Notes under the pieces: generated by a model
Told to the model about the DNA's origin: nothing
Databases searched by the model: none
The model's input: only the letters and a program-made list of their open reading frames with translations
Virus record (IMG/VR): IMGVR_UViG_3300035698_035310
Location: 186,001 to 250,000 of that record
Length of the DNA stretch: 64,000 bases
Reading direction: 5' to 3' (one strand)
Shown here: positions 17,977 to 40,492 of the stretch, in pieces
Numbering within the stretch: the stretch's first letter is position 1
How the letters are laid out: each line of letters opens with the position of its first letter
Program-made: the position numbers and the translations under genes

Positions 17977-18034
17977 TATAGATTGGCTTAAAACAGCCAT
18001 TCCAATCACATCTACCGTGGGGGGAGACAGTTAT
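17977..18034 (+). repeat. direct repeat DR2
   Basis: ttatagattggcttaaaacagccattccaatc...ccgtgggggagacagttat. Confidence 0.8.
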
Positions 18035-18776
18035 TTTTATTACCCTTTGACATATTGTCTTTAGCCCATAATGGCTGAAGATTTGTGTAATGCATCGCTT
18101 TATGCTGTTCATTTATATCCGATAAATCAAATGATGATAATGGAATAATATGATCTATATGCCAACCATCAGTAGCCCAGTTATCCCAAGACATCCCCAC
18201 CGTAAATTGATTCTCTAAATGTTCCTTTAATGTAGCAATGTCCGTTCCAATCAATTTTAACGCAGATTTAGTCTTCTTAACCCCGCTATTACGTAAATAC
18301 TTACCTAACGCATTTCTAAGATTAATACGCAGTTTAAAAAGTGGATCATTAGCATAGCGTTCCCTTCGAAGTTTATTCCGTATATCCCTTGTTTTACTAG
18401 CATATTTTTTGTCCCATCCAGACTTCAATTGTTTAAACTTTGAAGTTTTTGCGTAAGGAACCCTCCATATATCCCATGAACACTGCTTACAATACGTTTT
18501 TTTATCATAATGACACTTGCCAGAAAAATCACTCGGAAAACTATCTAAATCTTTTATAGTATCACATTTACGACATTTTCTCTTTCCTTCGCTTTGTAGT
18601 ATATGTAACTCTGATACATACTTTTTTTCTTCCATCAACTTTTCAGGGTCTTTGCTATTCTTTATACTTACACACTGCTTGCAACTTCCCCTTAAATATG
18701 AAGGATGATCCCGTATACCTGCTGATGCATAACTGTCTAATGATAATTCCCGATTGCATGTTTTACATTTTTTCAT
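18012..18776 (-). CDS. HNH homing-type endonuclease with N-terminal CxxC modules
   Basis: KKCKTC, RKCRKC; WHIDHIIPLSSFDL...HYTNLQPLWAKDNMSKGN; ATG directly after a TTGACA promoter. Confidence 0.85.
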   Translation of the reverse strand: MKKCKTCNRELSLDSYASAGIRDHPSYLRGSCKQCVSIKNSKDPEKLMEEKKYVSELHILQSEGKRKCRKCDTIKDLDSFPSDFSGKCHYDKKTYCKQCSWDIWRVPYAKTSKFKQLKSGWDKKYASKTRDIRNKLRRERYANDPLFKLRINLRNALGKYLRNSGVKKTKSALKLIGTDIATLKEHLENQFTVGMSWDNWATDGWHIDHIIPLSSFDLSDINEQHKAMHYTNLQPLWAKDNMSKGNKNNCLPPR

Positions 18777-21101: not shown

Positions 21102-22124
21102 ATGACTAATGCACTCACAACTGAAGATTTCATTCAACGTTCTATAGAAGCGCATAAGCCTTATCACGAACATTATGATTATAGCAAAGCGATCTATATC
21201 AAAACAACTAAAAAAATAACAATTACATGTAAGTTTCATGGCGACTTCGAAGTTATTGCTGCTACCCATCTAGGTGGTGCACATTGCAATAAGTGTAATA
21301 AAATGATTAATTCCATAATAAAAGAAGAAAATATTAGATTGCAAAAAATCGCTAACAATTATGAAATACAAGAAAAAGCAAAGGATTTCTACAACCGTGT
21401 TGATGAACGATTTGGTAGATTCAATTATAGTAAGAGTGTATTTGAAAATATGTCAACACCCATTATAATAAAATGCACTTGGCATGGCGAATTTGAACAA
21501 ACACCAAGTGTTCATTTAAGCCACCTTACAGGCTGTCCTGAGTGTAATCAGTTAGTTGCCAAGTGGCGTAACGATAGAACTACCCCAGCGTTCATTAAAA
21601 AGGCGAGAAAGGTGCATGGATGGCTATATGAATATGATAAAGTAGAATTTATTGATAATAAAACACCCATTACTATCATTTGCCCAGACCATGGTGTATT
21701 CAACCAAACACCATCGAATCACTTAAGGGGTGGAGGATGCCAAAAATGTGGCGGAAGGTTTGGGGCGAAAGAAACTGAATGGATAGAATATATGGAAGAA
21801 CGTATAGGTTATTCACTGGTCACCGACCACACTACCTTAAAGATGGCTGATGGCAAAGTATACTTCCCTGATGCATATGATCCTGACACTAAAACAGTAT
21901 ATGAATTCGATGGTGATTACTACCATGGCAATCCAAATAGATATGCACCTGATCAAACGAACTATACATCAAAGAAAACCATGGGTGAGCTATATGAAGC
22001 CACTCTCAAGAAAAAATCGGATTTAGAAACCAATGGCTATACTGTTTTGTCCATATGGGAAAGCGAATGGGATGCATTCAAGACGACTTTACCTGATAGA
22101 TTTCCTAATATCAAAGCAGCATAA
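21102..22124 (+). CDS. free-standing endonuclease: DUF723-like zinc-finger repeats plus a Vsr/PD-(D/E)xK-like catalytic domain
   Basis: Three YDYSK..Y.....I.I.C..HG.F.Q.P..HL.G..C..C repeats; PDAYD...YEFDGDYYHGNP...WE..W; GAAGGA RBS. Confidence 0.85.
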   Translation: MTNALTTEDFIQRSIEAHKPYHEHYDYSKAIYIKTTKKITITCKFHGDFEVIAATHLGGAHCNKCNKMINSIIKEENIRLQKIANNYEIQEKAKDFYNRVDERFGRFNYSKSVFENMSTPIIIKCTWHGEFEQTPSVHLSHLTGCPECNQLVAKWRNDRTTPAFIKKARKVHGWLYEYDKVEFIDNKTPITIICPDHGVFNQTPSNHLRGGGCQKCGGRFGAKETEWIEYMEERIGYSLVTDHTTLKMADGKVYFPDAYDPDTKTVYEFDGDYYHGNPNRYAPDQTNYTSKKTMGELYEATLKKKSDLETNGYTVLSIWESEWDAFKTTLPDRFPNIKAA

Positions 22125-22298
22125 AAAATAAGCCAAATAAAAAATTTATCGCGGACGAGAAGTCACCCTCATACCCGTACTGTAATAGTATAACGATCCT
22201 ATAAGTGTAAGGTAACAGCCACATGTGAATATATTCCTAGGAATTTTTTTCTATGTGTCATAGGAATATATACTCACGTATAAATTATAGGTAAAAAA

Positions 22299-22735
22299 TC
22301 ACAGTGTGACAGAATAAGTGCGCCAACTTTCATCACAGTGTGAATGAAACTGGAAAAATCATCACAGTGTGTGCATTTTGGAACACGTGTTTTGCTCACA
22401 GTGTGATATTTACCCTCACAGTGTGATTTTTTATCCTCACAGTGTGATATTTGGAACGCTTATCTGCTCACAGTGTGATATTTACCCTCACAGTGTGATT
22501 TTTTATCCTCACAGTGTGATATTTACCCTCACAGTGTGATATTTACCCTCACAGTGTGATTTTTTATCCTCACAGTGTGATATTTGGAACGCTTATCTGC
22601 TCACAGTGTGATTTTTTATCCTCACAGTGTGATATTTACCCTCACAGTGTGATTTTTTATCCTCACAGTGTGATATTTACCCTCACAGTGTGATTTTTTA
22701 TCCTCACAGTGTGATATTTGGAACACACACTGTGA
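22299..22735. repeat. array of 18 direct copies plus 1 inverted copy of the palindromic core TCACAGTGTG(A); candidate origin/iteron or protein-nucleation site
   Basis: Core starts at 22299, 22333, 22362, 22396, 22416, 22437, 22468, 22488, 22509, 22529, 22549, 22570, 22601, 22622, 22642, 22663, 22683, 22704; from 22396 onward spacings are 20/21/31 bp; located at the strand switch. Confidence 0.9.
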
Positions 22736-22857
22736 TGAATGTGAATTATTGAATAACTGTCTCCACCATGTTCCATAACTGTCTCCACACTAGATATAGT
22801 GGGTGTTAATGTGTAATATAGTTGCGCATTATAATTTCGTCATACACTCACAAAGTA

Positions 22858-22945
22858 GAACACTTATAGAACAAAGGTAGTTTTGAATTTTCCATAACAG
22901 ATGTTATGCGATTCTAACGGGGTAAACAGTGAACATAGGTGGAAC
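22858..22945 (+). promoter_or_regulatory. two alphaproteobacterial LexA-type boxes (GAAC-N7-GAAC)
   Basis: GAAC-ACTTATA-GAAC 22858-72; GAAC-ATAGGTG-GAAC 22931-45. Confidence 0.5.
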
Positions 22946-23031
22946 ATTTGTATCATACATAGTCCATATTGGTTTGATATGCATTATATATAATACATTG
23001 TCATAAGTGTTATACTGTGATATAATGTATC

Positions 23032-24891
23032 ATGGGATTAATACTGAATAGAATAGCGTATAGCAAAAATAATTGTTATAGGATAAATTACACATATAAT
23101 GGAGATATGGTGTCCAATGATGGATGGGTTGAGATGTCTTTATTTACGTTTGGCAGGCAAGTTGAACACAATTGGATAACTATGGATATGTTATTGGATA
23201 TGATCAACATTGATTATGAAGTATCTATAAGTGTGGCACAGTTATGAGAGATTTAACGGGTGAGATATTAAAAAGCATAGAGGAATTGATTAATACTACA
23301 TTACCGGATACACCGGAACGCAAAAGGGTTTCTGCACTTGGTGATGAAATACTTGATACATTAAGAATTCATCATGATATTGTAACGACGGTATATATAG
23401 TGAAGACGTTATATATAAAGAAAGATAATGGTAAGTATATTGTCATCAATAAAATGTTTAATGGTACAATATGTATATATAAGTATGACACTATTCTTGA
23501 CATAGTTAAGTTTGGTAAATTTGGATTAGATGAACTCATGAAAATGGATAACACATATGAAGATTCGGTTGTGGCACAGTTATGAGACTACTTAATGAAG
23601 ATCAATTGGAAGAACTTATGGATGCGATGATCAGGGATATGGTGGAGTATGAACTTACGGGTATTGAGGTATTGTTTTGGATGATAGAAGAAATACCACA
23701 ACTTGAAGCTATGGTATATATACGCAATGAATGAAGATGATCGATGGATGATACAGAAGACGATGATACGGAAGGTTCCATTACCGGTTAAGCGTCGTGT
23801 TATGCCGACAGTTATTGCGAATAACGTAGTTGGTGTATCACCGATGGCTCCACCGGTTAAGTCTATTCATACGATGCGGTTTGAGGATTACAGTGATTTA
23901 GAGATGGAAGAGGTTTTATACCGGTTGATTTTTGGCGGGACGGGACATTATTATCAGGTATGGTTATTCAATGAAGTTATTGATAATGATATGATGGTTA
24001 ACAGGGATGTATCAATTGGCAACGTTTGATGTTAGTAAGTTTAATAAGTTTAGGGTGCCAGTTGATAACCATAAAGGTATGTTACATTCTGGTATAAATG
24101 TGTATACGAACCCGTATATAAGATTGTTATCATCGCGCAATGCGCCGATTGAAGATTTAATAATAGTGATATTGAGAAATTCTATTGGTGTTGGTCAAGA
24201 AGCATTATTTAAACATATAAATCCACCGGTATTGGATAGCCATGTTACTATAGAACCCATAGGTGTTGATGAATAGGTCTTATGGGTTTCATAGGTCTTG
24301 AGCCATAGGTTTCATAGCATAGGTGCTATGGGTTTCATAGCATAGGTGCTATGGGTTTCATAGGAATAAAGCTATAGGAGTTATTGATGGCAATAAATGA
24401 TAGCAAATTACGCGGGGTGATTAAGTATACTATAGTTACGGATGATGGAGGGAAACCGATGACAAAGTTATTAGAAACTACTTGGGGAGAAGCCAAACGT
24501 GCATTAATGGAGGATCGTCGTTACACTGTCACTTATAAAGGATTTTCACATGTTGGTGACACTTATATAGATGCAATGTTACAATTAGTTCGATGGCGCA
24601 GTTTGGCGCGTGATGCTACTAATATGCATGAAGAACTGTTTGATATATTGAGTTCATATATAATTGAACGGGATGTATCGATAAGTGTCTTATAGATTAT
24701 TGATGATATTATTAGAATATCGTGCAGAGTTAGTATATCCATATACATATGAAGTATTAACACAAAGTAATACATCATATGTCCGTGTGACTAAAAAGCA
24801 GGAAGTTTTATGTGATATAATTGCGTCGCAGGAAAATTTATCGAAAATTATTTTTATAAATTGCGGAGAAATTTTAATTTCGGAGATTTGA
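23032..24891 (+). CDS. cluster of small AT-rich hypothetical genes with related C-termini (SISVAQL, SVVAQL, DVSIGNV, DVSISVL)
   Basis: ORFs 23032, 23244, 23703, 24007, 24384 and 24685; tails resemble those at 786-1530. Confidence 0.5.
24256..24380. repeat. degenerate tandem repeat of CATAGGTGCTATGGGTTTCATAG
   Basis: Exact ATAGGTGCTAT cores at 24319 and 24342 (23-bp period) with degenerate copies on both sides. Confidence 0.8.
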
Positions 24892-24897
24892 AAATCC

Positions 24898-24980
24898 GTT
24901 CTTGTTTTGTTCTGAATTTTTATTTGTTCTTGTTTTGTTCACGATCTGTTCTATGTTCTACTTTTGTTCTTGTTTTGTTC
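24898..24980. promoter_or_regulatory. array of five GTTC-N7-GTTC (alpha-LexA-type) boxes
   Basis: GTTC at 24898/24909, 24926/24937/24948 and 24955/24966/24977 (11-bp periodicity). Confidence 0.6.
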
Positions 24981-25134
24981 TAATTTCCTATTTTTCCTTT
25001 TTTCAAATATGACTGTTTCCTCCTTGACCCCAAGATACCAGATTTTGACCGTCCTGTCAAGTCTTTTCTTTAGTCCAGTTAGTTGATAGTTGGCACACTT
25101 ATTGCTGTCGCATGAATCGCGCCAAAATAAGTGC

Positions 25135-25253
25135 TTGACAAATTTTTTACTTGGGGGTATAGTTAAGATAGGGAGGGATGAGTGAAATTTAAAATCCAAA
25201 AAAAACTCATCCCTCCCTACGGTCAGTTTAGCACGTATTGAAAAGATGGTCAA
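25135..25253. promoter_or_regulatory. pair of face-to-face sigma70-type promoters, each initiating at AGGGAGGGATGAG
   Basis: Plus: TTGACA 25135, TATAGT 25158, motif 25169-82. Minus: TTGACC 25253-48, TAAACT 25230-25, motif 25219-06. Both have 17-bp spacers. Confidence 0.75.
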
Positions 25254-25528
25254 GTGTTTATTTCATTTTTTTGTATAATTGTGATATAGTGGGGCACTTA
25301 TATAAGGAGTGAATAGAAATTGAAAACGTGTGAATATTGTGAAAGGGAAGTGGTTAGTGAAATTCCCAAGGAGTCTGGCAAGGGTCGATGTTGTGGTATA
25401 GAATGTGGGCACCGTATAATATATGGTATATGGGATGAAGATTGCAGGCAGGTTATTGTTGAAGAAACTGATTGACATATAGAATGGGTGTGGTATGTAT
25501 AGATCATCATTAACCAAAGGAGATTATT

Positions 25529-25768
25529 ATGTCTAAAGCTATTATATCGCATCGCGCCATTTCTGATATGTGTATTGGCATATTGAAGAATCAATCCAAG
25601 ACGGCATTTACATTGGGCGAGTTCCAACAAGTGGCGGTTCCTATTATACAGACGGTGTTCCCTAACAACAACACTGTAAAGGATACGACACGTTATTCTT
25701 TACAGCAGTTACGCGACGCTGGTGTTGTTCGGTTTGTTGACGACGCTGGTATCTACAAAATTCTTTAA
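25529..25768 (+). CDS. stand-alone DpnI C-terminal-like winged-helix domain
   Basis: FTLGEF...VFPNNNTVKDTTRYSLQQLRDAGVVRFV...G.YK resembles the DpnI wH pattern FTL...F.KNNHIKEKIRQQLQILRD..IEF..G.Y. Confidence 0.65.
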   Translation: MSKAIISHRAISDMCIGILKNQSKTAFTLGEFQQVAVPIIQTVFPNNNTVKDTTRYSLQQLRDAGVVRFVDDAGIYKIL

Positions 25769-27864
25769 TCCTTGACGTCATAAGTTAAGTGTGATATGGT
25801 GCAATTAGATTGTTTGAACGGAAGGAACTATTATGGATCGTGAAGCACTTATAGAATTTCTCAAAGAAGAGATGGAACTTGAACTTAGCATTAGTGGTCA
25901 ATACCGCAATGCATTATGTGTTGAGATTAAAATCGGTGGCGAGTCGATAAGCTCGGATATCATTTCTGTTTCTGAATTCACGGATTGAAAGAAAACTCAT
26001 GGCTGATATGTATAACTATCATTTTGTGATGTCTAGTTACTCGCATACTGATAGGCGGCAATTGTGGCAAGTATGTTCTAAGCCATTTATACGGCAAGCA
26101 GACGCAGATACATGGATGGAATATATGCAAAGCGAAGAACCAAAAAAAGAGTTCTTTGTAATTGATCGCGAAATGCCACGTCACCATGATGAAAAATTTG
26201 ATTAGGTGGTTGACGTCATACATTAAGTGTGATATGGTGCAGTTATAATCTGATAGTTTCTGTTATGCCTTTCTTCAAAACATGAGGCACGTGATACAAT
26301 TCATCCTGCAAATGGTAATGTTGGGAACTATCAGATTAGTAAATTTTTGAAAGGAATTTATTATGTCACGATCACGGCGGAAAGTTAAAGATATCAAATG
26401 GCAGAAAGGGAAAGTGTGTCCTAAGTGTCGAAAGGGTAATTTGGTTGGTTGTGGTCAATCCAAGAAGAAAGGACACGAGAAGTGTGTTTTTTGTAGTGTT
26501 TGCAAGGTGGCTAATTTTTAATGGAAAGGAACCAACATGCCTAATGTATTGACGGTATTGAATATCAACAGTCCTTATGATGACACGGTGTCATTGCATA
26601 CTGATTGGCAGGGTGCTTATGAATCAATGGTTGACATGTTGCAATTATGTCATGTTGATTGTTCAAACATCAATCTTGAAGAGTCTGAGATCGATTTTGA
26701 ACTTGAAGACAACAAGGGCGAGTTATGGAAATGCACTATTCATTGTGATGTTGCAGTTCCCACTTGACACTTATTATAAGTGTGATATGGTGCAGTTAAA
26801 TTGAATGGAAAGGAATATACAATGATGCTCACAAAAACGAAAACGGTTGATACACTTATTGATGCGTTTAATGCGTCGGATTCACCCTCGGATCGATATG
26901 CAATTGGTAGTGCATTACGTAGCGAACTGGCGAATTTTGTTAAAAACCTTGATGAAACGATTTTGCCGATTTATCATAAGTGCGTTGTTGCCGATGTTCT
27001 TAAACCGATTAAGGGATAAGGGCAATGGTAAGCGTTGTTGAAAAAAGTGGCATCCGGTTTGTATGTCGTAAGCCAGCAAAGCAAGGCACGTATCTTTGTG
27101 TTGACACGGTTGATTTATATGCCAAGGGGTTAACGATTGGTCCTATACAAACGGCATTTATCAGTGAGAATTGGACATTGCGTTCGGTTAATTTAACTGT
27201 GAATGTGGAGAGGTGGTTGACGCGTAGTGGGCATATTCGCAAAGATTATAAGCGGCTGCATTTTTCTGAAAAAACGATTGAAGAATTGTTAGGAGATAAA
27301 AAATGAGAGTTAATTCGTTTGATTATTTAACAAGTCGTTTGGATCAGTTATCGAAAGATCGCGGCTCTCAGTCAAGCAATACTACGAGCGCATTGTGTAA
27401 CGTGTTCAATATTATGGGATCAATCACCTTTAATGAAATATATGAAGGGTTGGTTGATTATACGAACACAAATCACATGAAATCGGACGACGGATTTGAT
27501 CGTTTTCATGGTTGTGTTGGTGAAGGGTTTCATAAGTATTTCAGGCAAATTGATATGTTTGAAGATTATCAACGACCCGACGGCGAAGAAATTGGTGGTT
27601 ATTTGGATATGATTGCGTGGCATCTTATTGCTGGTAATAAAGCATTTTGGACTGTGTTTGCGGAACTTAGTTGGATTCATCATGAACTCACTAAGAATCC
27701 AGACCTTAATGTTGTTCGGTTGATTCGTGATGTTCGTAATGACGTTGAAGATTATTATGAAGATCAAAAGAAAAAAGATTGACATAATTGTCACACTGTT
27801 GTATAGTTAGATTATAGAAATTCACGCGTATATGTTCGGTGAGTTTTTCCAGCGAAACCTTTCT

Positions 27865-27967: not shown

Positions 27968-28501
27968 ATGAGTGATGATACGATAGACTTTCCGGGAACT
28001 ACGTCTAAAGCTCCGTCGAATGATCATGGTCCAATTATTGATTATAATACATTGATTCGTGCTGCTCATTTGAATGTTGTTAAAGACGCGATTCAAATCG
28101 TTTCGGATACTGGTCCTGCTGAATTCTTTAATATCAATATTACTTATGATTTGATGCACCCTGATTCGGTATCTGAAGAATGGTTGTGGAAGAAATATCC
28201 TGAGAAGATTACCATTATACTTAACAACCAATATGAAAACTTACACGTTGAGGACACTGGCTTTCGTGTCACCTTACATTTCGGTGGTTCTCCGGTTGCG
28301 TTGTTTGTTCCGTTTGATTCTATACTCAGTTATGTTGATATGGTTACGCGGGTTATGTTTTCGTTTGAAGACCCACATGCTAATGAACCAGTTGACAATC
28401 CATTTGAATCGGTTGATACGCCAGATATTAAATTGGTTCCTGATGCTGGCGCGGAAGTTATATCGTTGGACGCATTTAGGGATAAGAATAAAAAGGATTG
28501 A
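27968..28501 (+). CDS. sspB: alphaproteobacterial-type ClpXP adaptor SspB
   Basis: IDY..L...A...VV; KKYPEKITIILNNQY..L.V...GFRVTLHFGG....L.VPFDSI...VD; C-terminal ClpX-binding-type AEVISLDAFR. Confidence 0.85.
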   Translation: MSDDTIDFPGTTSKAPSNDHGPIIDYNTLIRAAHLNVVKDAIQIVSDTGPAEFFNINITYDLMHPDSVSEEWLWKKYPEKITIILNNQYENLHVEDTGFRVTLHFGGSPVALFVPFDSILSYVDMVTRVMFSFEDPHANEPVDNPFESVDTPDIKLVPDAGAEVISLDAFRDKNKKD

Positions 28502-33521: not shown

Positions 33522-35821
33522 TATGAAAAAACGTCCAATTGATATCAGGCGCGAAGGGCTTCATACGCAAGACCCTGCTATAACCTTGAAACAATTATTC
33601 GATTCTACCGATGGTGGATTGTGGGATCATAAAGGTGTTACTGACGCATGGGTATCATATAAGGATTCCAAAGGTCAACTGTATGGTAGCCATAAGTGCG
33701 TCCATGAGGTATGTATCGAAGGACGTGAATACAAAGTATCGCAATCTGCATTACCTAATTGGGGAATTCATATTTTGTTTACGGATGAAGTATATAAACC
33801 AAAAATAAATTATGTGACGCAAATGCGTTCATTAAATTTATTCATTAACTGTTAAAAAGGAGATTGATATGCAATTAGGCGATTCAGTTAAAGATTTAAC
33901 CGGCGACTTCGAGTTGGGTGAAATTATTGATATATATACGAACCGTCACGGCGACCATCCGGTTATTATGTATACGGTCGATTTTGGCGATGATAATGTA
34001 TTTGATCGATTGTTTCATGAAATAAGTGCTTGACTATTGGTTCAGTTATGTTAGATTAACTGTATTGAAATGAAAGGAAACATTATGGCTAAATCGATGT
34101 TTGAAGTTGAATGGATTTCGGAACAGGGTGGTGGACATACCATTTTGTCAGAAGAGGTTGCGGCGGAAGACGAAGGCGAGGCGATGGATGTTGCCTATGA
34201 TGATTATTATTTCTTGAAATTAATATCTGTAAATCATTTATATGACATTGAAGGAGAAACGCCGTGAAAACCAAAAAGATATATGTTACGATTGCGGTAG
34301 AAGTTAAAGAAGACTTCAATATGCAGAAAGCGTATACTGAAATGACATACGCGTTGGATCATGATGATATCGTCGGTACTGAAATCGTTGATGTTGAAAC
34401 ACAATTGAGTCGATATGGATGGGAGGACTGATATGCGCGGCACAAAACCATTAGCCCCTATGTCGAACTGGCACCGGTTGTTGACCATGTTGAGTTTGAA
34501 TGGTGGATCATTATACCGAGCACAACTGTATACTGCCAAACCTAAGATCAAAAAATATGTTGATCATGACGGCAATACCAAATATAAATCAATTCCAGCA
34601 AAAGACCTTCACACTTATATCGATACTGGCAAATTGCGCAAAGTGACTTGTGTATCATCATTTGCGCCATTGTCATATGCATATGAGCATCGGGCGGAAA
34701 GCATGGGATTGGTTCATATTAAAAAATTCAATAATCGCAAATGGATTACGTTGTTGCCAAAGGGACGTGCCGTGTTGGCGATGTTGGATGTTGGAAAGAA
34801 ATGGGTTCCAGAAACGAAAATTGAAAGGGAGTTTATTCGATGAGTAATATCTTTACAGCGCCGTTAGGGCTTGTATACGAAATCGACGATCAGAACTATA
34901 TCACTACTTCCGTGACTATGGACTTAAATGAGATCATCGATACCAACAACGAAGGGTTTCTTGATGCATTATCTATCTATGCTACAGATACTGAATTGTT
35001 AATGGATATTGATTATAAACTTCTGCGCATTGACGAACATGGTGCACTAGTGTTTAGAGTCCATGGCGATTTATCGGCGATCACAGATGACTGATAAACC
35101 AAAATCTAAACGGGGTCGAAAGAAAAAGGAACCGGAACCTCCTACCCCGACGAATTTGGTTCATTGTACATTGATGGCATGCGGCATGGTTCATCTTGAT
35201 CCAGCCAAGTGTCCCAAATGCGGCAATGATGATTCACAGCGCCCACTTAAGTTTGTAGGTGTTCCCATTTATATGACAATTGTTTAGGAGTAGCATATGA
35301 CTAAAATGATTTACACTGTAGTGCGCCGTCCCAAGGTTGGACGTCATGGGTTAACCACCATTGGGTGGGCGGAAGAATGTGGCAGAGAAGCGATTGTCAC
35401 GGGTGGTTATTTACATACTCGACGCACGTTACCGGGGGAACAAACTTATTACACGGCAATCATGACAAAAGCGAACTTTGATAGATGGCTCGGCGACAAA
35501 TTTGAAACCCGTGCACAAGCCGCGTTCGCTATATGGCGTCTATATTATAAAAATGAGCGTGCGAAACGTGATCAAGATAAAGCGAATGAAGCGAATGGAA
35601 AACATGCACGTGCGGTCGGGCGGAAACATAAACGCGAACATCGTGCGACGCCTGAAGGACAAGAAGAACGCCGGTTGATGTTAAATCGTAAAGCAAAAGA
35701 AAAGCGTGATAACATGACGGATGAACAGCGCAAGGCGATCAATGATAAACTTAAGAAACGTCGTGCGCATAAGAAAGAATTCGGTTGACATTGTGGAAAC
35801 ACTTGTTATATTAGTAACATC

Positions 35822-35895
35822 GGGGGCATAGCTCAGTGGTAGAGCAGTGGGTTCTAAACCCTTTGTCGGGAGTTCGACTCTCCCTGCCCTCGCCA
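35822..35895 (+). tRNA. tRNA with CUA anticodon (amber suppressor), Trp-like body
   Basis: Acceptor GGGGGCA/TGCCCTC, D arm GCTC/GAGC, anticodon loop TT-CTA-AA, T arm GGGAG-TTCGACT-CTCCC, G73 and encoded CCA; own TTGACA promoter at 35785. Confidence 0.92.
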
Positions 35896-35915: not shown

Positions 35916-36392
35916 ATGTCGGCAATTACTGATTTTTACCAAGGGTTCGGAACTGATGATAAAGGACGCTCACTTGATGATTACTTATTGTTCTCAGATG
36001 AACAATTAGAATCGGTTCATGATTATATCCAGTGGATGTTTCCCAACACGGAAGTCAGCCGATTTAATATCGATGCACCATTGCTTACAGATGCTGACAT
36101 TGAATTGTTTATGAATGACATACCAATGATGAACAATGTAACGTTGGCGTGTGCACGCATGACTAAATTTTATAAGTTTTCCAATATATATGTTGATGCA
36201 GAGAGACAATGGGTTACACAAGGCAATCATAATTTTTTACGACTTACTCGTATGTTGAAATTTCTTCGATCTATAAACAAAAATTATGAAGCAGAGTCGT
36301 TGTTTGTTATGCTTGCTAGAGTTTATTCAGATAATTCATTCGTGGTTGGCAAAGACACACTTCGGTATTGGTTGGACGCAGCAGAGAGTTAA
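35916..36392 (+). CDS. OGFr (opioid growth factor receptor) conserved-region domain protein
   Basis: LESVHDYIQWMFP...HNFLRLTRMLKFL. Confidence 0.85.
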   Translation: MSAITDFYQGFGTDDKGRSLDDYLLFSDEQLESVHDYIQWMFPNTEVSRFNIDAPLLTDADIELFMNDIPMMNNVTLACARMTKFYKFSNIYVDAERQWVTQGNHNFLRLTRMLKFLRSINKNYEAESLFVMLARVYSDNSFVVGKDTLRYWLDAAES

Positions 36393-36592: not shown

Positions 36593-36997
36593 GTCTTGAC
36601 ATATCGCTTGACACTGTTATTATACTGGTAGGGAGGGATGAGTTTTTTCTGGATACATTATGATAAAAATAAGTGCTTGACAATTGGTTCAGTTATGTTA
36701 GTATCATAATCAGAAAAGGGAGATGAAAAATGATTGGATTCTTACTATACATTGTAGCATTATTCATGTTATTGACTATACCATCTAATATATGGATTGT
36801 TCCATTATTGTTTGGTATGTTGTTTCATTGGAAAATGTGGTTGACTGGTATTGCTGCATTCTTTGTAGGAGCAGGGTTCAATAAAAACTTTTAACTGCAT
36901 CAAAATAAATGCTTGACACGACGAAATAACCTGCTAATATCACTACATCAAACGACACTTACGGGCTTTTACTTAACACTAATAGGAGACTATCACC

Positions 36998-39184
36998 ATG
37001 CAAATCAAAACAGAAAATCGAGAAGTTGGGCGTTCCGGCACTTCAAACGAACGGACGTTTAACATCGATATGACTGCCAAGGCATTTAAGATTCTATCCG
37101 ACGGATTGTATTCGGATAAAATTCTTGCTGTTGTTCGTGAACTTTCTTGTAATGCCAAGGATTCACATATCGACGCTGGCAAAAATGACGTGCCTTTCGA
37201 AATTCACCTACCGAATTCACTTGAGCCGTGGTTCGCGGTTACTGATTACGGACTTGGGTTATCACCTGACGATGTATTGGAAATGTATTCCACTTATTTT
37301 GCTTCAACCAAAACGGGTTCAAACGATGTAACGGGGTGTCTTGGACTTGGTTCTAAATCGCCTTTTGCTTATACCGATTCGTTTTCAGTTGAAACACGTT
37401 GGAATGGCACACTTACTGTATTTTCATGTTTCTATAACGAGGCAGGTATCCCCTCAATCGTTATTTTGGGTGACGAAGACGGAATGCCTACCGACGAAGT
37501 GAACGGCGTTACCGTTAAAATGGCTGTAAACGATGGTGACATGCGCGAATTCGCACAAAAGGCAATGAAGGCACTTGATCGCTTTGATCCTGCCCCTATC
37601 GTTACTGGTAACACTGATTATGAAATTGTTACTAAGACTTATACGGTTGAAGGCAAAGGCTGGAAGATGCTTGAACGTGAAAGTTCATATGGTGAAAGCA
37701 AAATCCATGCTATCCAAGGCAATGTAACATATCCAATTAGTTCACAATCATTAGGCGACTTGACAAGCAATCAAGATGCAATTATGGGATTGACAGTTGA
37801 TTTGTTCTTTGATATCGGCGAGTTGGACGTTGCGGCAAACCGCGAGGCGTTGGGTTATGATGAAGCAACGATTAAAAATATCAAGGCTAAACTTGATGCC
37901 GTATCGACTGAAATTGCCCCATTGTTTCAGGATAAATTTAAGGATTGTAAAACACTTTGGGATGCGCGTTTGTTGTTCAAAGAAGTGATCAATCCTTTGA
38001 CATCTGGCTTGCAACGGATTCTATCTGACAACAATGTTGGGTTGAAATGGAAAAAGCAATCACTATCTGATTCGTTCAAATTGGATCGCGATGATTTTCC
38101 TAACGTTCAGATTGTATCATTCCAAAAGAATACACGCGGTGGACGTGGGCAAACTGCGGAATGGAGTTATAACGGTGATATTAAATTCCCCGCCAGTTCC
38201 GATATTCTGTTTTTCTATGACGATGTTGGCAATGGTTCGCATAGCCGAGTGACTCATTTTATGGAAACAAATGGTGACTCTGTTCGTTATCAGCATATGT
38301 TCAAAACCGACGATAAAAAAATGATGAAAAAGATTTCTAAGGCGTTGGGTAATGTTACTATTCAACCTGTAAGCAATCTTGAAAAACGCCCCAAGGCTGT
38401 TCGCCAAGCGCGACGAGTTACATCAAAGGTTTTGGAATATGTTGGACGCGCCCATGATCGCCGTGATAGTTGGAATCCTACTGATCTGGATTTAACGACT
38501 GGTGGTGTTTATGTTATGATTGATCGCTTTAAGGTATATGATTCCAATAATGGTTCAGGACGTGAACGTGAAGATTTTAACACCATTGTCGATTTGGCGA
38601 AAGAACATAAAATCGTTGACTTGACTAACAAGATCGTTTATGGAATTCGTAAAGGTGATGTTGATAAATTGAAAGATGATTCTGGTTGGGTTAATCTTTT
38701 CGACCTGATCCGCGACAAACTTACGGTTGCGGTTAAAAAAGAAAAGGTGGCGCAAGTTATGGCTGACCGTTATGCCTATCACCAGTTTTCAAATGATTTA
38801 TCATCGTTCGTTAATGATATGGATGATACTGATTTGGCAAAGGATTCAGTTATTGGAATATTCAAACGCGCACATGAATATCTTTCAAACCGTGATTCAT
38901 CTAAGGCACAAGCGATTTCAAGTGTTGCGGATAGCGTAGGATTTACGTTAAAATCTGCCAAGCCAAAACACGATCTTGGGAAACTTTGGGACGCTGTTAA
39001 AAATAAGTATCCATTATTGAAACTTGTTTCTGACAGTGATTTGCGCGGCGGTTATTACAACAATCGCGACAACTCTATCAGTGAAAATAACCATGCGGCA
39101 TTGACTGATTATATCGCGATGGTTGACGCAAAAGACGCAGTGCCAGAAAAGCGTAAAATCCTTACGTTGGCCTCGGCGGCATAA
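36998..39184 (+). CDS. rIIA: rIIA protein (GHKL ATPase N-terminus)
   Basis: LSDGLYSDKILAVVRELSCNAKDSH...TDYGLG...STK...GCLGLGSKSPFAYT; directly upstream of rIIB. Confidence 0.9.
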   Translation: MQIKTENREVGRSGTSNERTFNIDMTAKAFKILSDGLYSDKILAVVRELSCNAKDSHIDAGKNDVPFEIHLPNSLEPWFAVTDYGLGLSPDDVLEMYSTYFASTKTGSNDVTGCLGLGSKSPFAYTDSFSVETRWNGTLTVFSCFYNEAGIPSIVILGDEDGMPTDEVNGVTVKMAVNDGDMREFAQKAMKALDRFDPAPIVTGNTDYEIVTKTYTVEGKGWKMLERESSYGESKIHAIQGNVTYPISSQSLGDLTSNQDAIMGLTVDLFFDIGELDVAANREALGYDEATIKNIKAKLDAVSTEIAPLFQDKFKDCKTLWDARLLFKEVINPLTSGLQRILSDNNVGLKWKKQSLSDSFKLDRDDFPNVQIVSFQKNTRGGRGQTAEWSYNGDIKFPASSDILFFYDDVGNGSHSRVTHFMETNGDSVRYQHMFKTDDKKMMKKISKALGNVTIQPVSNLEKRPKAVRQARRVTSKVLEYVGRAHDRRDSWNPTDLDLTTGGVYVMIDRFKVYDSNNGSGREREDFNTIVDLAKEHKIVDLTNKIVYGIRKGDVDKLKDDSGWVNLFDLIRDKLTVAVKKEKVAQVMADRYAYHQFSNDLSSFVNDMDDTDLAKDSVIGIFKRAHEYLSNRDSSKAQAISSVADSVGFTLKSAKPKHDLGKLWDAVKNKYPLLKLVSDSDLRGGYYNNRDNSISENNHAALTDYIAMVDAKDAVPEKRKILTLASAA

Positions 39185-39340
39185 GAAACTCCTACCTAGC
39201 CCGTAGGTGGCAGGGTTGAACGGTGATTGACTTCTTCTGTTTAATCCTGCCAAACTAATTTGAAATGAGTGCTTGACAATATAACAAATGGTGGTAATAT
39301 TCATTATCACATTCGGAAACCAACTAGGAGACTAAAACTT

Positions 39341-40492
39341 ATGAAAACGATTCAAGCCGCAATTATCGCCCAAAATTCAATCACACTTATGATTGACGGG
39401 CAAACTACGCCTATCGCCTCTTCGCATACAAACTATGAAGAAATTCGTGGACTTGCTGCCGCTGGCAACTATGCACCAATTGCATCATTGCTTGATATGG
39501 TTCAGGTTATTAACGACTTTGGTAAAGGACGCGTTACCGTTGAAAACGGTGAAGTTCTTTATGATGGTAAGCCTACCCATAACGCGGTGACTTCGCGTAT
39601 CCTTCAAATGGTTGAAGAAGGTTTGGAAGTTTCACCAATGGTTGCATTCCTTGATAACCTTATGGATAACCCTTCATTCCGTTCCGTTCAACAGTTATAC
39701 GGTTTCTTGGAAGTGAACGACCTTCCGATCACGGAAGACGGTTTCTTTCTTGCCTATAAAATGTGCGCCGAGGTTAATGGTAAATTGACTGATATTCGCA
39801 CGCAAACGTTTGATTATAGCGTTGGCGCAAAACCTGCCGAAATGCCACGTAACGAAGTGAACGAAGACCCTGATCAAACTTGTTCTTCTGGTTTGCACGT
39901 ATGCGCCCAAGGTTATCTTGGTTCATACAGTTCTGGCGAACATACGATTTTGGTTAAAGTTAATCCTGCCGATGTTGTTGCAGTTCCGACTGACTACAAT
40001 AACGCCAAAATGCGGGTAAGCAAACATGAAACCGTTTGTAAGGTTACTGCGCGAACTCGCGGTGCTGTATATACCAGTGCGGTTTATACCCCTTCGGCGG
40101 ATTCAAAAAGCACACTGGTAAATGGCGATGATTTGCTTACGCTGGATGAAGCAGTTGACGTTCTTGGGCTTAAGGGTGCTAAAAATCCAATTGCCGCACT
40201 ACGTAAGCGCCTATCGCGTGCAAAGCTGACTTCTAACCCTAAACTCAAGTCGGTTTTCAAAGATGGTGTTGAAATGATTCAAATCATCCAAACGGAGGCC
40301 GACGATGTTGAAGTTGCTGACGATTCGGTTATGACTCACGTTGATGCAATCGCATACTTTGCCAAGCAAAACAAAGCCAATGGCAAGGCACAACCAGCCG
40401 ACCCGAAAGCGGCATTGCGTAAAATGCTTAATCGTGAATCTGCTTGCAAGCGCGTTTACGTTGATGGTGTTGAGATGATCAAAATTCTTTAA
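39341..40492 (+). CDS. rIIB: rIIB protein with a duplicated C-terminal extension
   Basis: FLDNLMDNPS.RSV.QLYGFL....LPITEDG.FLAYK...MPRNEV.EDP.QTCS.GLHV...VKVNPADVV.VP.DYNNAKMR. Confidence 0.92.
   Translation: MKTIQAAIIAQNSITLMIDGQTTPIASSHTNYEEIRGLAAAGNYAPIASLLDMVQVINDFGKGRVTVENGEVLYDGKPTHNAVTSRILQMVEEGLEVSPMVAFLDNLMDNPSFRSVQQLYGFLEVNDLPITEDGFFLAYKMCAEVNGKLTDIRTQTFDYSVGAKPAEMPRNEVNEDPDQTCSSGLHVCAQGYLGSYSSGEHTILVKVNPADVVAVPTDYNNAKMRVSKHETVCKVTARTRGAVYTSAVYTPSADSKSTLVNGDDLLTLDEAVDVLGLKGAKNPIAALRKRLSRAKLTSNPKLKSVFKDGVEMIQIIQTEADDVEVADDSVMTHVDAIAYFAKQNKANGKAQPADPKAALRKMLNRESACKRVYVDGVEMIKIL

What the first reader, a model, noticed from the sequence alone, without database searches (positions are those of the whole stretch)
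35785..35895. Amber-suppressor tRNA(CUA) in a region that still uses TAG as stop
Seen: a canonical cloverleaf with anticodon CTA, G73, encoded CCA and its own promoter; the anticodon stem has G-U and U-U irregularities. TAG terminates several ORFs here (e.g. 786, 18012, 24695, 32144, 35287, 40753, 42769, 47207, 62141, 63314), while rIIA, rIIB, the helicase and the macrodomain are intact under the standard code. Inference: regulated readthrough, recoding restricted to genes outside this window (e.g. late/lysis genes), or a counter to host tRNA-targeting defence. The body looks Trp-like, so the charged amino acid is uncertain.
Basis: partly seen in the sequence, partly recalled or inferred. Interest (0 to 1): 0.65.

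Follow-up and report, generated by a model that had tools for sequence, protein, structure and literature searches.

The report
Conserved amber-suppressor tRNA in a megaphage
A genuine tRNA that reads the UAG stop codon sits upstream of rIIA in a ~570-kb salt-lake phage that otherwise uses the standard code; related phages keep it in the same slot and one conserved phage gene carries an in-frame UAG, so UAG is probably a leaky stop during infection, as already reported for other jumbo phages.

Summary
Window 35822-35895 (+) is a canonical tRNA with anticodon CUA, G73 and an encoded CCA. It is the best-scoring tRNA of the genome (Rfam 65 bits) and lies 9 nt after an 11/12 sigma-70 promoter. Contigs from four salt-lake samples show no differences there.

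The window belongs to a circular-mapping genome of about 570 kb. I examined about 430 kb, and it reads cleanly under code 11. TAG ends about 10% of genes in the 359-kb record. There is no general excess of coding sequence after TAG, and the baseplate genes, including a 3446-aa ORF, are intact. This is therefore not a code-15 genome.

The tRNA is nevertheless not idle. Two related phages (rIIA 73% and 62% identical) carry a tRNA(CUA) in the same slot, with compensatory stem changes. A third relative has tRNA-Lys(UUU) there. A second, unrelated tRNA(CUA) lies in the tRNA cluster.

One conserved gene outside the window (phrog_14850, genome 305,342) has an in-frame TAG, with homology continuing on both sides.

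Best reading: a functional amber suppressor, probably charged with Gln, that makes UAG leaky and lets in-frame TAG persist. XacN1 and RsoM2USA show the same kind of tRNA. Expression and charging are untested, and about 140 kb was not seen.

The parts
35785..35790 (+). -35 hexamer TTGACA of the tRNA's promoter. It overlaps the TGA stop (35786-35788) of the upstream 163-aa gene.
   Evidence: 11/12 match. It is one of 125 near-consensus sigma-70 promoters in the 359-kb record, against 9-28 in shuffles.
35807..35812 (+). -10 hexamer TATATT, with an extended -10 TG at 35804-35805. The predicted transcript start is about 2-4 nt before the tRNA 5' end.
   Evidence: The start site itself is inferred, not shown.
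35822..35895 (+). tRNA with anticodon CUA (amber suppressor), G73 and encoded CCA.
   Evidence: 65 bits, best in the genome. No differences in four samples. Orthologous tRNA(CUA) in L162 and L164.
35854..35856 (+). Anticodon CTA within the loop UUCUAAA (U33, A37, A38).
   Evidence: The loop is shared by 11 phage tRNA(CUA) genes that were aligned.
35297..35788 (+). 163-aa gene of unknown function. It is the conserved left neighbour that defines the tRNA slot.
   Evidence: blastp gives 38-52% identity to the gene just before the tRNA in L162, L164 and L163. No Pfam hit.
35916..36392 (+). 158-aa OGFr_N-like gene starting 20 nt after the CCA, with its own Shine-Dalgarno sequence. No terminator lies in between, so it is probably co-transcribed with the tRNA.
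   Evidence: PF04664, 49 bits. Co-transcription is inferred.
36596..36623 (+). Next sigma-70-type promoter (TTGACA-16-TATTAT), ahead of rIIA.
   Evidence: genome 222,596. It also explains the short dispersed repeat seen.
36998..39184 (+). rIIA (728 aa), the right-hand synteny anchor used to find relatives.
   Evidence: rIIB follows at 39269-40492 (PF26926 in relatives).

Best explanation
This is a functional amber-suppressor tRNA gene that a clade of very large phages keeps between a conserved 163-aa gene and rIIA.

How it most likely works:
- The host RNA polymerase transcribes it from a strong sigma-70-type promoter, so it is probably made from early in infection.
- RNase P trims a very short leader. 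The CCA is encoded.
- A host synthetase that relies mainly on U35 charges it. For this G73 / G31-C39 version that is most plausibly GlnRS.
- It then competes with release factor 1 at UAG. UAG becomes a leaky stop rather than a sense codon.

The genome tolerates this for three reasons. TAG is its rarest stop. TAG is nearly absent from long genes and from the translation and baseplate regions sampled. Readthrough adds a median of only 10 codons.

The pay-off is that in-frame TAG codons can persist or be used. At least one conserved gene (an HD-motif protein of family phrog_14850 at genome 305,003-305,566) needs UAG suppression to give a full-length product.

The phage thus sits at the stage that Borges et al. 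proposed as the step before TAG reassignment: a suppressor has been acquired while the code is still standard.

Shown: the gene, its promoter motif, its conservation and covariation, the standard code, and the one in-frame TAG.
Inferred: expression, charging, the amino acid inserted, suppression efficiency, and the selective benefit.
For: Real and canonical tRNA.

Not an assembly error.

Promoter: 11/12 match. It belongs to a class that is about 6-fold enriched and matches gene strand.

Orthologous slot:
- tRNA(CUA) in L162 (rIIA 73% identical) and L164 (62%).
- tRNA-Lys(UUU) in L163 (57%).
- Double compensatory changes at acceptor pairs 2-71, 3-70, 4-69, 5-68 and 7-66 and in the T stem.
- Across 12 phage tRNAs, 94.8% of cells pair and 20 of 21 pairs show changes on both sides.

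The relatives also end 2-3 of about 25 genes per locus with TAG.

A second, unrelated tRNA(CUA) lies at genome 28,369-28,446.

Standard code:
- ORF coverage is 92% under code 11, with little gain if TAG is read as sense.
- Stops are TAA 352, TGA 151, TAG 59.
- Coding-looking extensions follow TAG no more often than TAA, and the junctions show a Shine-Dalgarno sequence plus ATG.
- gp5-like, gp25, 1269-aa and 3446-aa baseplate/fibre genes are intact.

In-frame TAG target:
- The two halves hit phrog_14850 at positions 89-186 and 197-266.
- Both halves hit the same 29 jumbo phages at adjacent in-frame places. It is a single CDS in pT24 and RsoM2USA.
- The alignment is collinear through the TAG.
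- The split ORFs are on record in JGI, ENA and Logan assemblies.

Gln call: the E. coli Gln and Lys identity sets and the 31-39 effect come from PMC1483225. E. coli tRNATrp(CUA) is charged by GlnRS (PMC2965240). The window tRNA has G73, G3-C70, G10, C34, U35, A37 and G31-C39.

Precedent and model: PMC5852040, PMC8504454 and preprint 10.1101/2021.08.26.457843.
Against: No RNA run holds the locus, so expression, processing and charging are unshown.

The host is unknown. The phage TyrRS gives no taxonomic signal, so the E. coli identity rules may not apply.

Only one in-frame TAG was found among about 640 genes. It could be a recent nonsense mutation in a dispensable gene. The aligned position is variable (F, T or I in homologs), so it says nothing about the amino acid inserted.

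TAG-ending genes show no enrichment of nearby back-up stops. Median extension is 10 codons, against 8 for TAA and 7 for TGA.

The U28-U42 mismatch is specific to this copy and may weaken the tRNA.

G1-C72, G2-U71, A36 and A38 depart from the E. coli Gln set.

About 140 kb of the genome, where the capsid, portal, terminase and lysis genes may lie, was not examined.

My gene set comes from a crude codon-bias ORF picker, not a trained gene finder.
Confidence: 0.55

Rival explanations
1. The phage is a true TAG-recoded (code-15-like) phage. Its recoded genes (capsid, portal, terminase, lysis) lie in the ~140 kb that I could not read, and this tRNA is the code-switch tRNA.
For: No capsid, terminase or sheath gene was recognised in the 359-kb record. 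IMG/VR trimmed 211 kb of the contig as non-viral. In the 71 kb of that part which I sampled, TAG ends only 1 of 74 genes, against 59 of 562 in the record (Fisher p=0.009). There are two suppressor tRNAs. Recoding concentrated in late genes is known.
Against: The sampled part holds late baseplate/fibre genes (686, 136, 1269, 3446, 609 and 696 aa) with no internal stop. A ClpP-like head maturation protease lies inside the record and ends at a TAG. The trimming is explained by bacterial-like genes (EF-Tu, EF-Ts, L33, GreA, GroES, PurM). No RF2 gene was found, and the only release-factor homolog is RF1-like. TAG ends 59 genes spread over the whole record.
Confidence: 0.1
2. The suppressor acts mainly on the host. 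Examples would be extending host proteins that end in UAG as part of takeover, or rescuing phage genes hit by nonsense mutations. On this reading the single in-frame TAG is an incidental pseudogene.
For: The early-type promoter. Conservation across relatives that all still use TAG stops. tRNA(CUA) genes recur near rIIA/rIIB in 8 of 80 distant IMG/VR loci and in XacN1 and RsoM2USA, where no targets were found.
Against: No direct evidence for any host effect, and the host is unknown. The post-TAG half of the phrog_14850 gene is intact and 72% identical to its RsoM2USA homolog, which is not what a long-dead pseudogene would show.
Confidence: 0.2
3. The tRNA is a neutral relic: a former sense tRNA (Lys or Trp) whose anticodon mutated, now carried along without function.
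For: A relative has tRNA-Lys(UUU) in the same slot. This copy has a U28-U42 mismatch. No expression data exist.
Against: It has the best tRNA score in the genome, with all invariant nucleotides and the CCA kept. CUA is kept in three lineages whose rIIA proteins differ by 27-38%, with compensatory stem changes. It has a near-consensus promoter.
Confidence: 0.07
4. Programmed, gene-specific readthrough. The tRNA exists to make a fixed ratio of short and long products of particular genes, such as the HD-motif protein, or the head protease with the 163 aa that follow it in frame.
For: The in-frame TAG in phrog_14850. TAG at genome 297,625 ends a ClpP-like head maturation protease and is followed in frame by 163 coding-looking residues.
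Against: For the protease, no family spans the stop and an ATG lies 9 nt downstream. Seven other TAG junctions tested are ordinary gene boundaries. Conservation of these TAGs in relatives could not be checked.
Confidence: 0.08

Closest known systems
tRNA-Sup(CUA) genes of Xanthomonas jumbo phage XacN1 (PMC5852040) and Ralstonia jumbo phage RsoM2USA (PMC8504454)
   Same: These are jumbo myovirus-like phages with many tRNAs that use the standard code and TAG stops, yet encode one or two tRNA(CUA) genes. XacN1 gives one of the best rIIA hits for this phage. RsoM2USA has the closest homolog of the TAG-interrupted gene. The anticodon loops are the same.
   Different: The tRNA bodies are only 58-60% identical to the window tRNA. 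In XacN1 they sit in the terminal-repeat tRNA cluster, not next to rIIA. In-silico readthrough found no targets in XacN1, whereas one interrupted conserved gene is found here.
Suppressor tRNAs of TAG-recoded (code 15) phages: Lak megaphages, crAss-like phages and others (Borges et al. preprint 10.1101/2021.08.26.457843; PMC9523058)
   Same: A phage-encoded tRNA(CUA) in a low-GC, very large phage with its own translation genes. TAG is the rarest stop. The model has early, standard-code expression of the suppressor.
   Different: Here TAG still ends about 10% of genes, late baseplate genes have no in-frame TAG, and only one in-frame TAG was found. The phage carries an RF1-like gene, not RF2.
Standard-code Agate phage with an acquired TGA suppressor (same preprint)
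   Same: A suppressor tRNA in a standard-code phage closely related to other phages, read there as the step before recoding.
   Different: That case is opal rather than amber, in gut phages of much smaller size. No conserved syntenic slot or candidate target gene is described in what I read.
E. coli su+7 (tRNA-Trp with anticodon CUA), per Yaniv et al. 1974 as cited in PMC2965240
   Same: A Trp-like body with G73 and anticodon CUA. In E. coli that change moves charging from TrpRS to GlnRS, which is the basis for my Gln guess.
   Different: su+7 is a laboratory point mutant with A1-U72. The window tRNA has G1-C72, G2-U71 and a 4-nt variable loop. Its syntenic relative is a tRNA-Lys, so descent from tRNA-Trp is not shown.

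Membership tests
tRNA (Rfam RF00005) | Cloverleaf scoring above the gathering threshold over the full model | tested here: met
   65 bits against a threshold of 29, model positions 1-71, E=7.6e-12. ARAGORN agrees.
tRNA (Rfam RF00005) | Invariant and semi-invariant nucleotides (U8, A14, G18G19, A21, U33, G53 T54 Psi55 C56, A58, C61, R15-Y48) | tested here: met
   Read directly from the sequence. All are present.
Amber suppressor tRNA | Anticodon CUA in a 7-nt loop with U33 and a purine at position 37 | tested here: met
   Loop UUCUAAA. There are no differences in four samples.
Amber suppressor tRNA | Maintained by selection: conserved anticodon and compensatory stem changes in orthologs | tested here: met
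   CUA in the same slot in L162 and L164, with double changes in the acceptor, anticodon and T stems. Only two orthologs were available.
Amber suppressor tRNA | Is expressed, aminoacylated and inserts an amino acid at UAG | not testable with these tools
   No RNA run holds the locus.
tRNA-Pyl (ARAGORN's label) | Atypical Pyl architecture (very short D loop, 3-nt variable loop, 6-bp anticodon stem) together with PylS | tested here: not met
   The tRNA has a canonical 7-nt D loop, a 5-bp anticodon stem and a 4-nt variable loop. PylS_Cterm gives only a 29-bit sub-threshold hit on a HisRS-like ORF. The architectural criteria come from my own knowledge.
Code-15 (TAG=Gln) recoded phage | TAG not used as a stop, and many conserved genes with in-frame TAG | tested here: not met
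   59 of 562 genes end in TAG. One in-frame TAG was found in about 430 kb. About 140 kb was not examined.
Code-15 (TAG=Gln) recoded phage | Phage-encoded RF2, seen in several recoded lineages (an accessory feature, not a strictly defining one) | tested here: not met
   No RF-1 or PCRF domain in the 359-kb record. The only homolog, just outside the record, is RF1-like (prfA 121-124 bits against prfB 54).
Bacterial tRNA-Trp | Anticodon CCA, G73, A1-U72 (E. coli identity set) | tested here: not met
   G73 is present, but the anticodon is CUA and the first pair is G1-C72. The best cellular full-length matches are tRNA-Trp at 76-80% identity, which is resemblance only.
Substrate of E. coli-type GlnRS | U1-A72, G2-C71, G3-C70, G10, Y34, U35, G36, A37, U38, G73 (PMC1483225) | tested here: inconclusive
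   Six of ten are present (G3-C70, G10, C34, U35, A37, G73). G2-U71 is a partial match. G1-C72, A36 and A38 differ. G31-C39 disfavours LysRS. The host and its synthetases are unknown.

The most novel reading that the evidence does not exclude
UAG is deliberately kept ambiguous in this phage clade. On this reading, two conserved amber suppressors act together with a phage RF1-like factor. That factor lacks domain 1, has its PxT motif changed from PPT to PPN, and is itself interrupted by an in-frame UGA at a conserved Trp position. Together they would set the level of UAG termination during infection. That level would gate the full-length synthesis of particular proteins: the HD-motif protein, and possibly a head protease fusion. 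This would be a stable, regulated intermediate between the standard code and code 15, not a passing stage.
Probability: 0.15. Interest if true: 0.75.

Novelty: new member of a known kind. Interest (0 to 1): 0.45.

Why it matters
Stop-codon reassignment in phages is known only from its end state (code 15 or code 4 genomes) and from a model of how it starts. This genome and its relatives offer a concrete, testable early state. They have a conserved suppressor in a fixed slot and a sister lineage with tRNA-Lys in that slot. TAG is still used as a stop, and a single conserved gene already depends on suppression. If the tRNA is active, the clade could show which comes first (suppressor, loss of TAG stops, or in-frame TAG) and which amino acid is chosen. 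If it is inactive, it is one more unexplained Sup-tRNA like those of XacN1 and RsoM2USA.

Tried and rejected
Sequencing or assembly error: rejected (and the relatives).

tRNA-Pyl: rejected on architecture, and no PylS was found.

Recent duplicate of another phage tRNA: rejected. The highest identities are 73% to Phe, 68% to Trp and 64% to the other suppressor.

Genome-wide TAG, TGA or TAA reassignment: rejected on ORF statistics.

Programmed readthrough at eight other TAG junctions: no family spans the stop.

Searches for close relatives that found nothing useful:
- blastn against phages.
- tRNA pattern with a free anticodon, and rIIA, against IMG/VR.
- rIIA against metagenome contigs, which returned only the source contig.

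Host inference from the phage TyrRS failed. It is 33-39% identical to many phyla.

The second suppressor had no match in 401 Pseudomonadota genomes.

Searching the whole 570-kb record was not possible because the record is not held.

One relative locus (P0123, rIIA 70% identical) came back without DNA.

I did not run the large representative-protein search. Clustering at 50% identity would hide the close relatives needed to see whether the TAG at 305,342 is conserved.

Structure prediction, fold search and complex prediction were not used, because no claim here rests on a protein fold or a protein contact.

Full report
**1. The observation**

ARAGORN finds a single tRNA in the window, at 35822-35895 on the + strand, with anticodon CTA. 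Rfam's tRNA model matches it end to end at 65 bits, E=7.6e-12. In a scan of the whole 359,044-bp record this is the best-scoring of 37 tRNA matches.

Read from the sequence:
- The acceptor stem is GGGGGCA/UGCCCUC, with a G2-U71 wobble.
- The discriminator is G73 and CCA is encoded.
- The D loop is AGUGGUA and the variable loop has 4 nt.
- The anticodon loop is UUCUAAA, with CTA at 35854-35856.
- The anticodon stem has a G27-U43 wobble and a U28-U42 mismatch above three G-C pairs.
- All the usual invariant nucleotides are present.

A TTGACA-16-TATATT promoter with a TG extension lies at 35785-35812, an 11 of 12 match. It ends 9 nt before the tRNA.

Contigs from four salt-lake metagenome runs cover the tRNA with no difference. 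One run is at depth 73 and three come from other samples. The CTA anticodon is therefore not an assembly error. These are contigs, so rare variants would not show.

**2. What genome this is**

The window is bases 186,001-250,000 of a 359,044-bp virus record with 36% GC. That record is the last 359 kb of a 570,750-bp JGI contig. IMG/VR classes the record as a 'provirus'.

An independent ENA assembly gives a 570,549-bp contig with a different starting point. It joins the two ends of the JGI contig. This fits a circular-mapping genome of about 570.5 kb.

The DNA just outside the record has the same GC content. It carries an RF1-like gene, GreA, GroES, PurM, an ADP-ribosylarginine hydrolase, EF-Ts, a split EF-Tu, ribosomal protein L33, SIR2, MscS, methionine aminopeptidase and radical-SAM clusters. 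On the other side it carries a baseplate module. I take the 'provirus' trimming to be a false call caused by these bacterial-like genes.

The record itself encodes:
- EF-G, ClpX and a TROVE-domain protein.
- A full-length TyrRS, a TilS-like enzyme and a GluRS catalytic core without an anticodon-binding domain.
- A HisRS-like core.
- A family B DNA polymerase and topoisomerase II.
- 32 to 37 tRNA genes, mostly at 18-48 kb.

The host is unknown. The sigma-70 promoters and Shine-Dalgarno sequences argue against Bacteroidota. The TyrRS gives no taxonomic signal.

**3. Is TAG recoded?**

Under code 11, ORFs of at least 60 aa cover 92% of the record. Reading TAG as sense adds less than reading TGA or TAA as sense does.

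A crude codon-bias gene picker gives 562 genes, with stops TAA 352, TGA 151 and TAG 59. TAG stops occur in every 30-kb bin, but in only 1 of 35 genes of 400 aa or more.

A coding-looking in-frame extension follows 17% of TAG stops, 11% of TAA stops and 1% of TGA stops. Nearly all the TAG cases are ordinary boundaries with a Shine-Dalgarno sequence and an ATG a few bases on.

I read 71 kb outside the record. It holds 74 genes, only one of which ends in TAG (Fisher p=0.009 against the record). There are no ORF pairs split by TAG. The late genes there are intact: a gp5-like hub with lysozyme (686 aa), gp25 (136 aa), a 1269-aa protein and a 3446-aa fibre-like protein.

No RF2 gene and no RF domain is present in the record. 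This is not a code-15 genome in the roughly 430 kb examined. About 140 kb remains unread, because the look-ups were exhausted.

**4. One in-frame TAG**

Of nine TAG junctions with coding-looking extensions, one is different.

The 113-aa ORF at genome 305,003-305,341 matches family phrog_14850 at profile positions 89-186 (E=1.5e-27). The 74 residues that follow the TAG in frame match the same family at positions 197-266 (E=1.6e-26).

By tblastn, both halves hit the same 29 jumbo phages at adjacent in-frame places. In Tenacibaculum phage pT24 and Ralstonia phage RsoM2USA the region is one uninterrupted CDS.

A MAFFT alignment is collinear through the TAG. An HD motif lies upstream and a well-conserved C-terminal half lies downstream. 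The aligned residue at the TAG column is F, T or I in homologs, so the position is variable.

The split ORFs are on record in JGI, ENA and Logan assemblies. There is no start codon with a ribosome-binding site directly after the TAG.

The other eight junctions show no family spanning the stop. Either this gene needs UAG suppression for a full-length product, or it carries a recent nonsense mutation. I could not check relatives or allele frequency.

**5. Conservation of the tRNA**

A word search with rIIA found a clade of metagenomic relatives at 52-73% identity. Three loci came with DNA. In each, the homolog of the 163-aa gene (38-52% identity) is followed by a tRNA and then rIIA and rIIB. The slot holds:
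- tRNA(CUA) with G73 in L162.
- tRNA(CUA) with A73 in L164.
- tRNA-Lys(UUU) with A73 in L163.

Excluding the anticodon, the window tRNA is 71% identical to both CUA orthologs. L164 is 73% identical to the Lys tRNA, and the two share an unusual D arm.

The stems differ by double compensatory changes at acceptor pairs 2-71, 3-70, 4-69, 5-68 and 7-66 and in the T stem. On 12 phage tRNAs the cloverleaf pairs in 94.8% of cells, with 20 of 21 pairs changed on both sides.

The relatives also use TAG stops.

A path from Lys(UUU) through Lys(CUU) to CUA, followed by A73 to G73 and A31-U39 to G31-C39, would fit these data. The direction of change is not shown.

Among 80 more distant rIIA loci of IMG/VR, eight carry a tRNA(CUA) 1-3 kb downstream of rIIA. 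XacN1 and RsoM2USA also carry such tRNAs.

The genome has a second tRNA(CUA) at 28,369-28,446 (U1-A72, A73). It is only 64% identical to the first and has no close cellular match.

**6. Which amino acid**

Among 401 Pseudomonadota genomes, the best full-length matches to the window tRNA are tRNA-Trp(CCA) at 76-80% identity, including the acceptor stem and G73. The Met and Phe hits rest on the D and T arms only.

In E. coli a tRNA-Trp with anticodon CUA is charged by GlnRS (PMC2965240).

Against the published E. coli sets (PMC1483225), the window tRNA carries six of the ten Gln elements (G73, G3-C70, G10, C34, U35, A37). It carries only U35 of the four Lys elements. Its G31-C39 pair disfavours LysRS.

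I therefore favour Gln, with Trp or Lys possible. This is an inference that depends on an unknown host. The phage's own TyrRS has no obvious partner. No tRNA-Tyr(GUA) was found, and neither CUA tRNA has the long variable arm that bacterial TyrRS uses (that requirement is from my own knowledge).

**7. Mechanism and rivals**

The promoter belongs to a class of 125 near-consensus sigma-70 promoters in the record, against 9-28 in shuffles, and these follow gene orientation. Transcription by the host polymerase, probably early, is therefore the likely mode. No terminator follows the tRNA, and the next ORF starts 20 nt after the CCA.

I conclude that the tRNA most likely makes UAG a leaky stop. The phage tolerates this because TAG is rare, is avoided in long genes, and is followed by another stop after a median of 10 codons. 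The suppressor in turn lets in-frame TAG persist. This matches the pre-recoding stage proposed by Borges et al..

The rivals are recoding in the unread 140 kb, a mainly host-directed role, a neutral relic, and gene-specific programmed readthrough. They are weighed in their own sections.

**8. Verdict**

The finding is real and the tRNA is very probably functional. The kind is already known from XacN1, RsoM2USA and the recoding literature.

What is new here:
- The conserved slot next to rIIA, with a Lys/CUA alternation among relatives.
- The pairing with a second suppressor.
- One candidate target gene.

Interest is moderate.

Noticed in passing
Outside the window: genome 28,369-28,446 (+) = L001:10869-10946: A second tRNA(CUA) lies in the tRNA cluster. 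It has U1-A72, A73 and the same UUCUAAA loop. It is only 64% identical to the window tRNA and has no match in 401 Pseudomonadota genomes.
   Followed up: partly
Outside the window: genome 305,003-305,566 (+) = L003:5003-5566: A conserved HD-motif gene (phrog_14850) is interrupted by one in-frame TAG at 305,342-305,344. It is a single CDS in pT24 and RsoM2USA.
   Followed up: yes
L090:60-764 (+), just outside the 359-kb record: An RF1-like gene lacks domain 1. GGQ is kept and the PxT motif reads PPN, where relatives have PPT. An in-frame TGA at codon 36 aligns with a conserved Trp in the 233-aa relatives. More than 1500 short relatives exist, and most are called at about 186 aa from the same internal start, so the internal stop may be common in the family.
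   Followed up: partly
Whole record, with L088, L090, L113, L115: The 359-kb 'provirus' record is part of a contig of about 570.5 kb that maps as a circle in a second assembly. The trimmed part looks like phage DNA, with the same GC content, translation genes and a baseplate module.
   Followed up: partly
L113:20105-21290 (-) and L159:8353-10891: The phage EF-Tu is split into a 77-aa and a 296-aa ORF by an insert of about 230-280 nt at the HVD/CPGHADY junction. This may be an intron. A GIY-YIG endonuclease gene lies just upstream. EF-Ts, L33 and EF-G are nearby.
   Followed up: no
Genome 92,019-94,538; 288,502-289,353; 38,372-38,971: The phage encodes a TilS-like enzyme next to a full-length TyrRS (TIGR00234, 324 bits). 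It also has a GluRS catalytic core without an anticodon-binding domain (283 aa) and a HisRS-like core (199 aa). No tRNA-Tyr(GUA) was found.
   Followed up: partly
Genome 17,997-18,068; 18,169-18,286; 23,684-23,769; 34,932-35,039: Several tRNAs are odd. One has a 2-nt 'anticodon' in a 6-nt loop. Two have inserts of 38-51 nt in the anticodon loop. One is an 86-nt 'tRNA-Asn(GUU)' with a long variable arm and G73.
   Followed up: no
Window 36596-36654 and genome-wide: A short repeat appeared many times on both strands in the read-laying output. It coincides with the shared sequence of the sigma-70-type promoters. There are 125 such promoters at 11/12 or better, about 6-fold over shuffles, and they follow gene strand.
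   Followed up: yes
Window 22124-27000, including ORF 23703-24029 (+): This stretch has only short ORFs and strong positive GC skew. The 108-aa ORF has a weak match to the N-terminal part of T4-type major head proteins (PF07068, 28.5 bits; phrog_138). No full capsid gene was recognised in the record.
   Followed up: partly
Genome 296,983-298,116 (+) = L252:83-1216: A ClpP-like head maturation protease (214 aa) ends in TAG and is followed in frame by 163 coding-looking residues. An ATG lies 9 nt after the stop, and no family spans the stop.
   Followed up: partly
L183-L186, L188, L203, L239, L244 (IMG/VR loci): Eight of 80 distantly related rIIA loci carry a tRNA(CUA) 1-3 kb downstream of rIIA/rIIB. 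All have A73 and diverse bodies.
   Followed up: partly
Sampled DNA outside the record (ENA contig about 272,800-309,330 and 449,438-484,304): TAG ends only 1 of 74 genes here, against 59 of 562 in the record (p=0.009). TAG as a trinucleotide is not depleted. Bins within the record also vary from 3% to 16%.
   Followed up: partly
Window 35916-36392 (+): The gene right after the tRNA matches the opioid growth factor receptor N-terminal family (PF04664, 49 bits). It is absent from this position in the three relatives.
   Followed up: no
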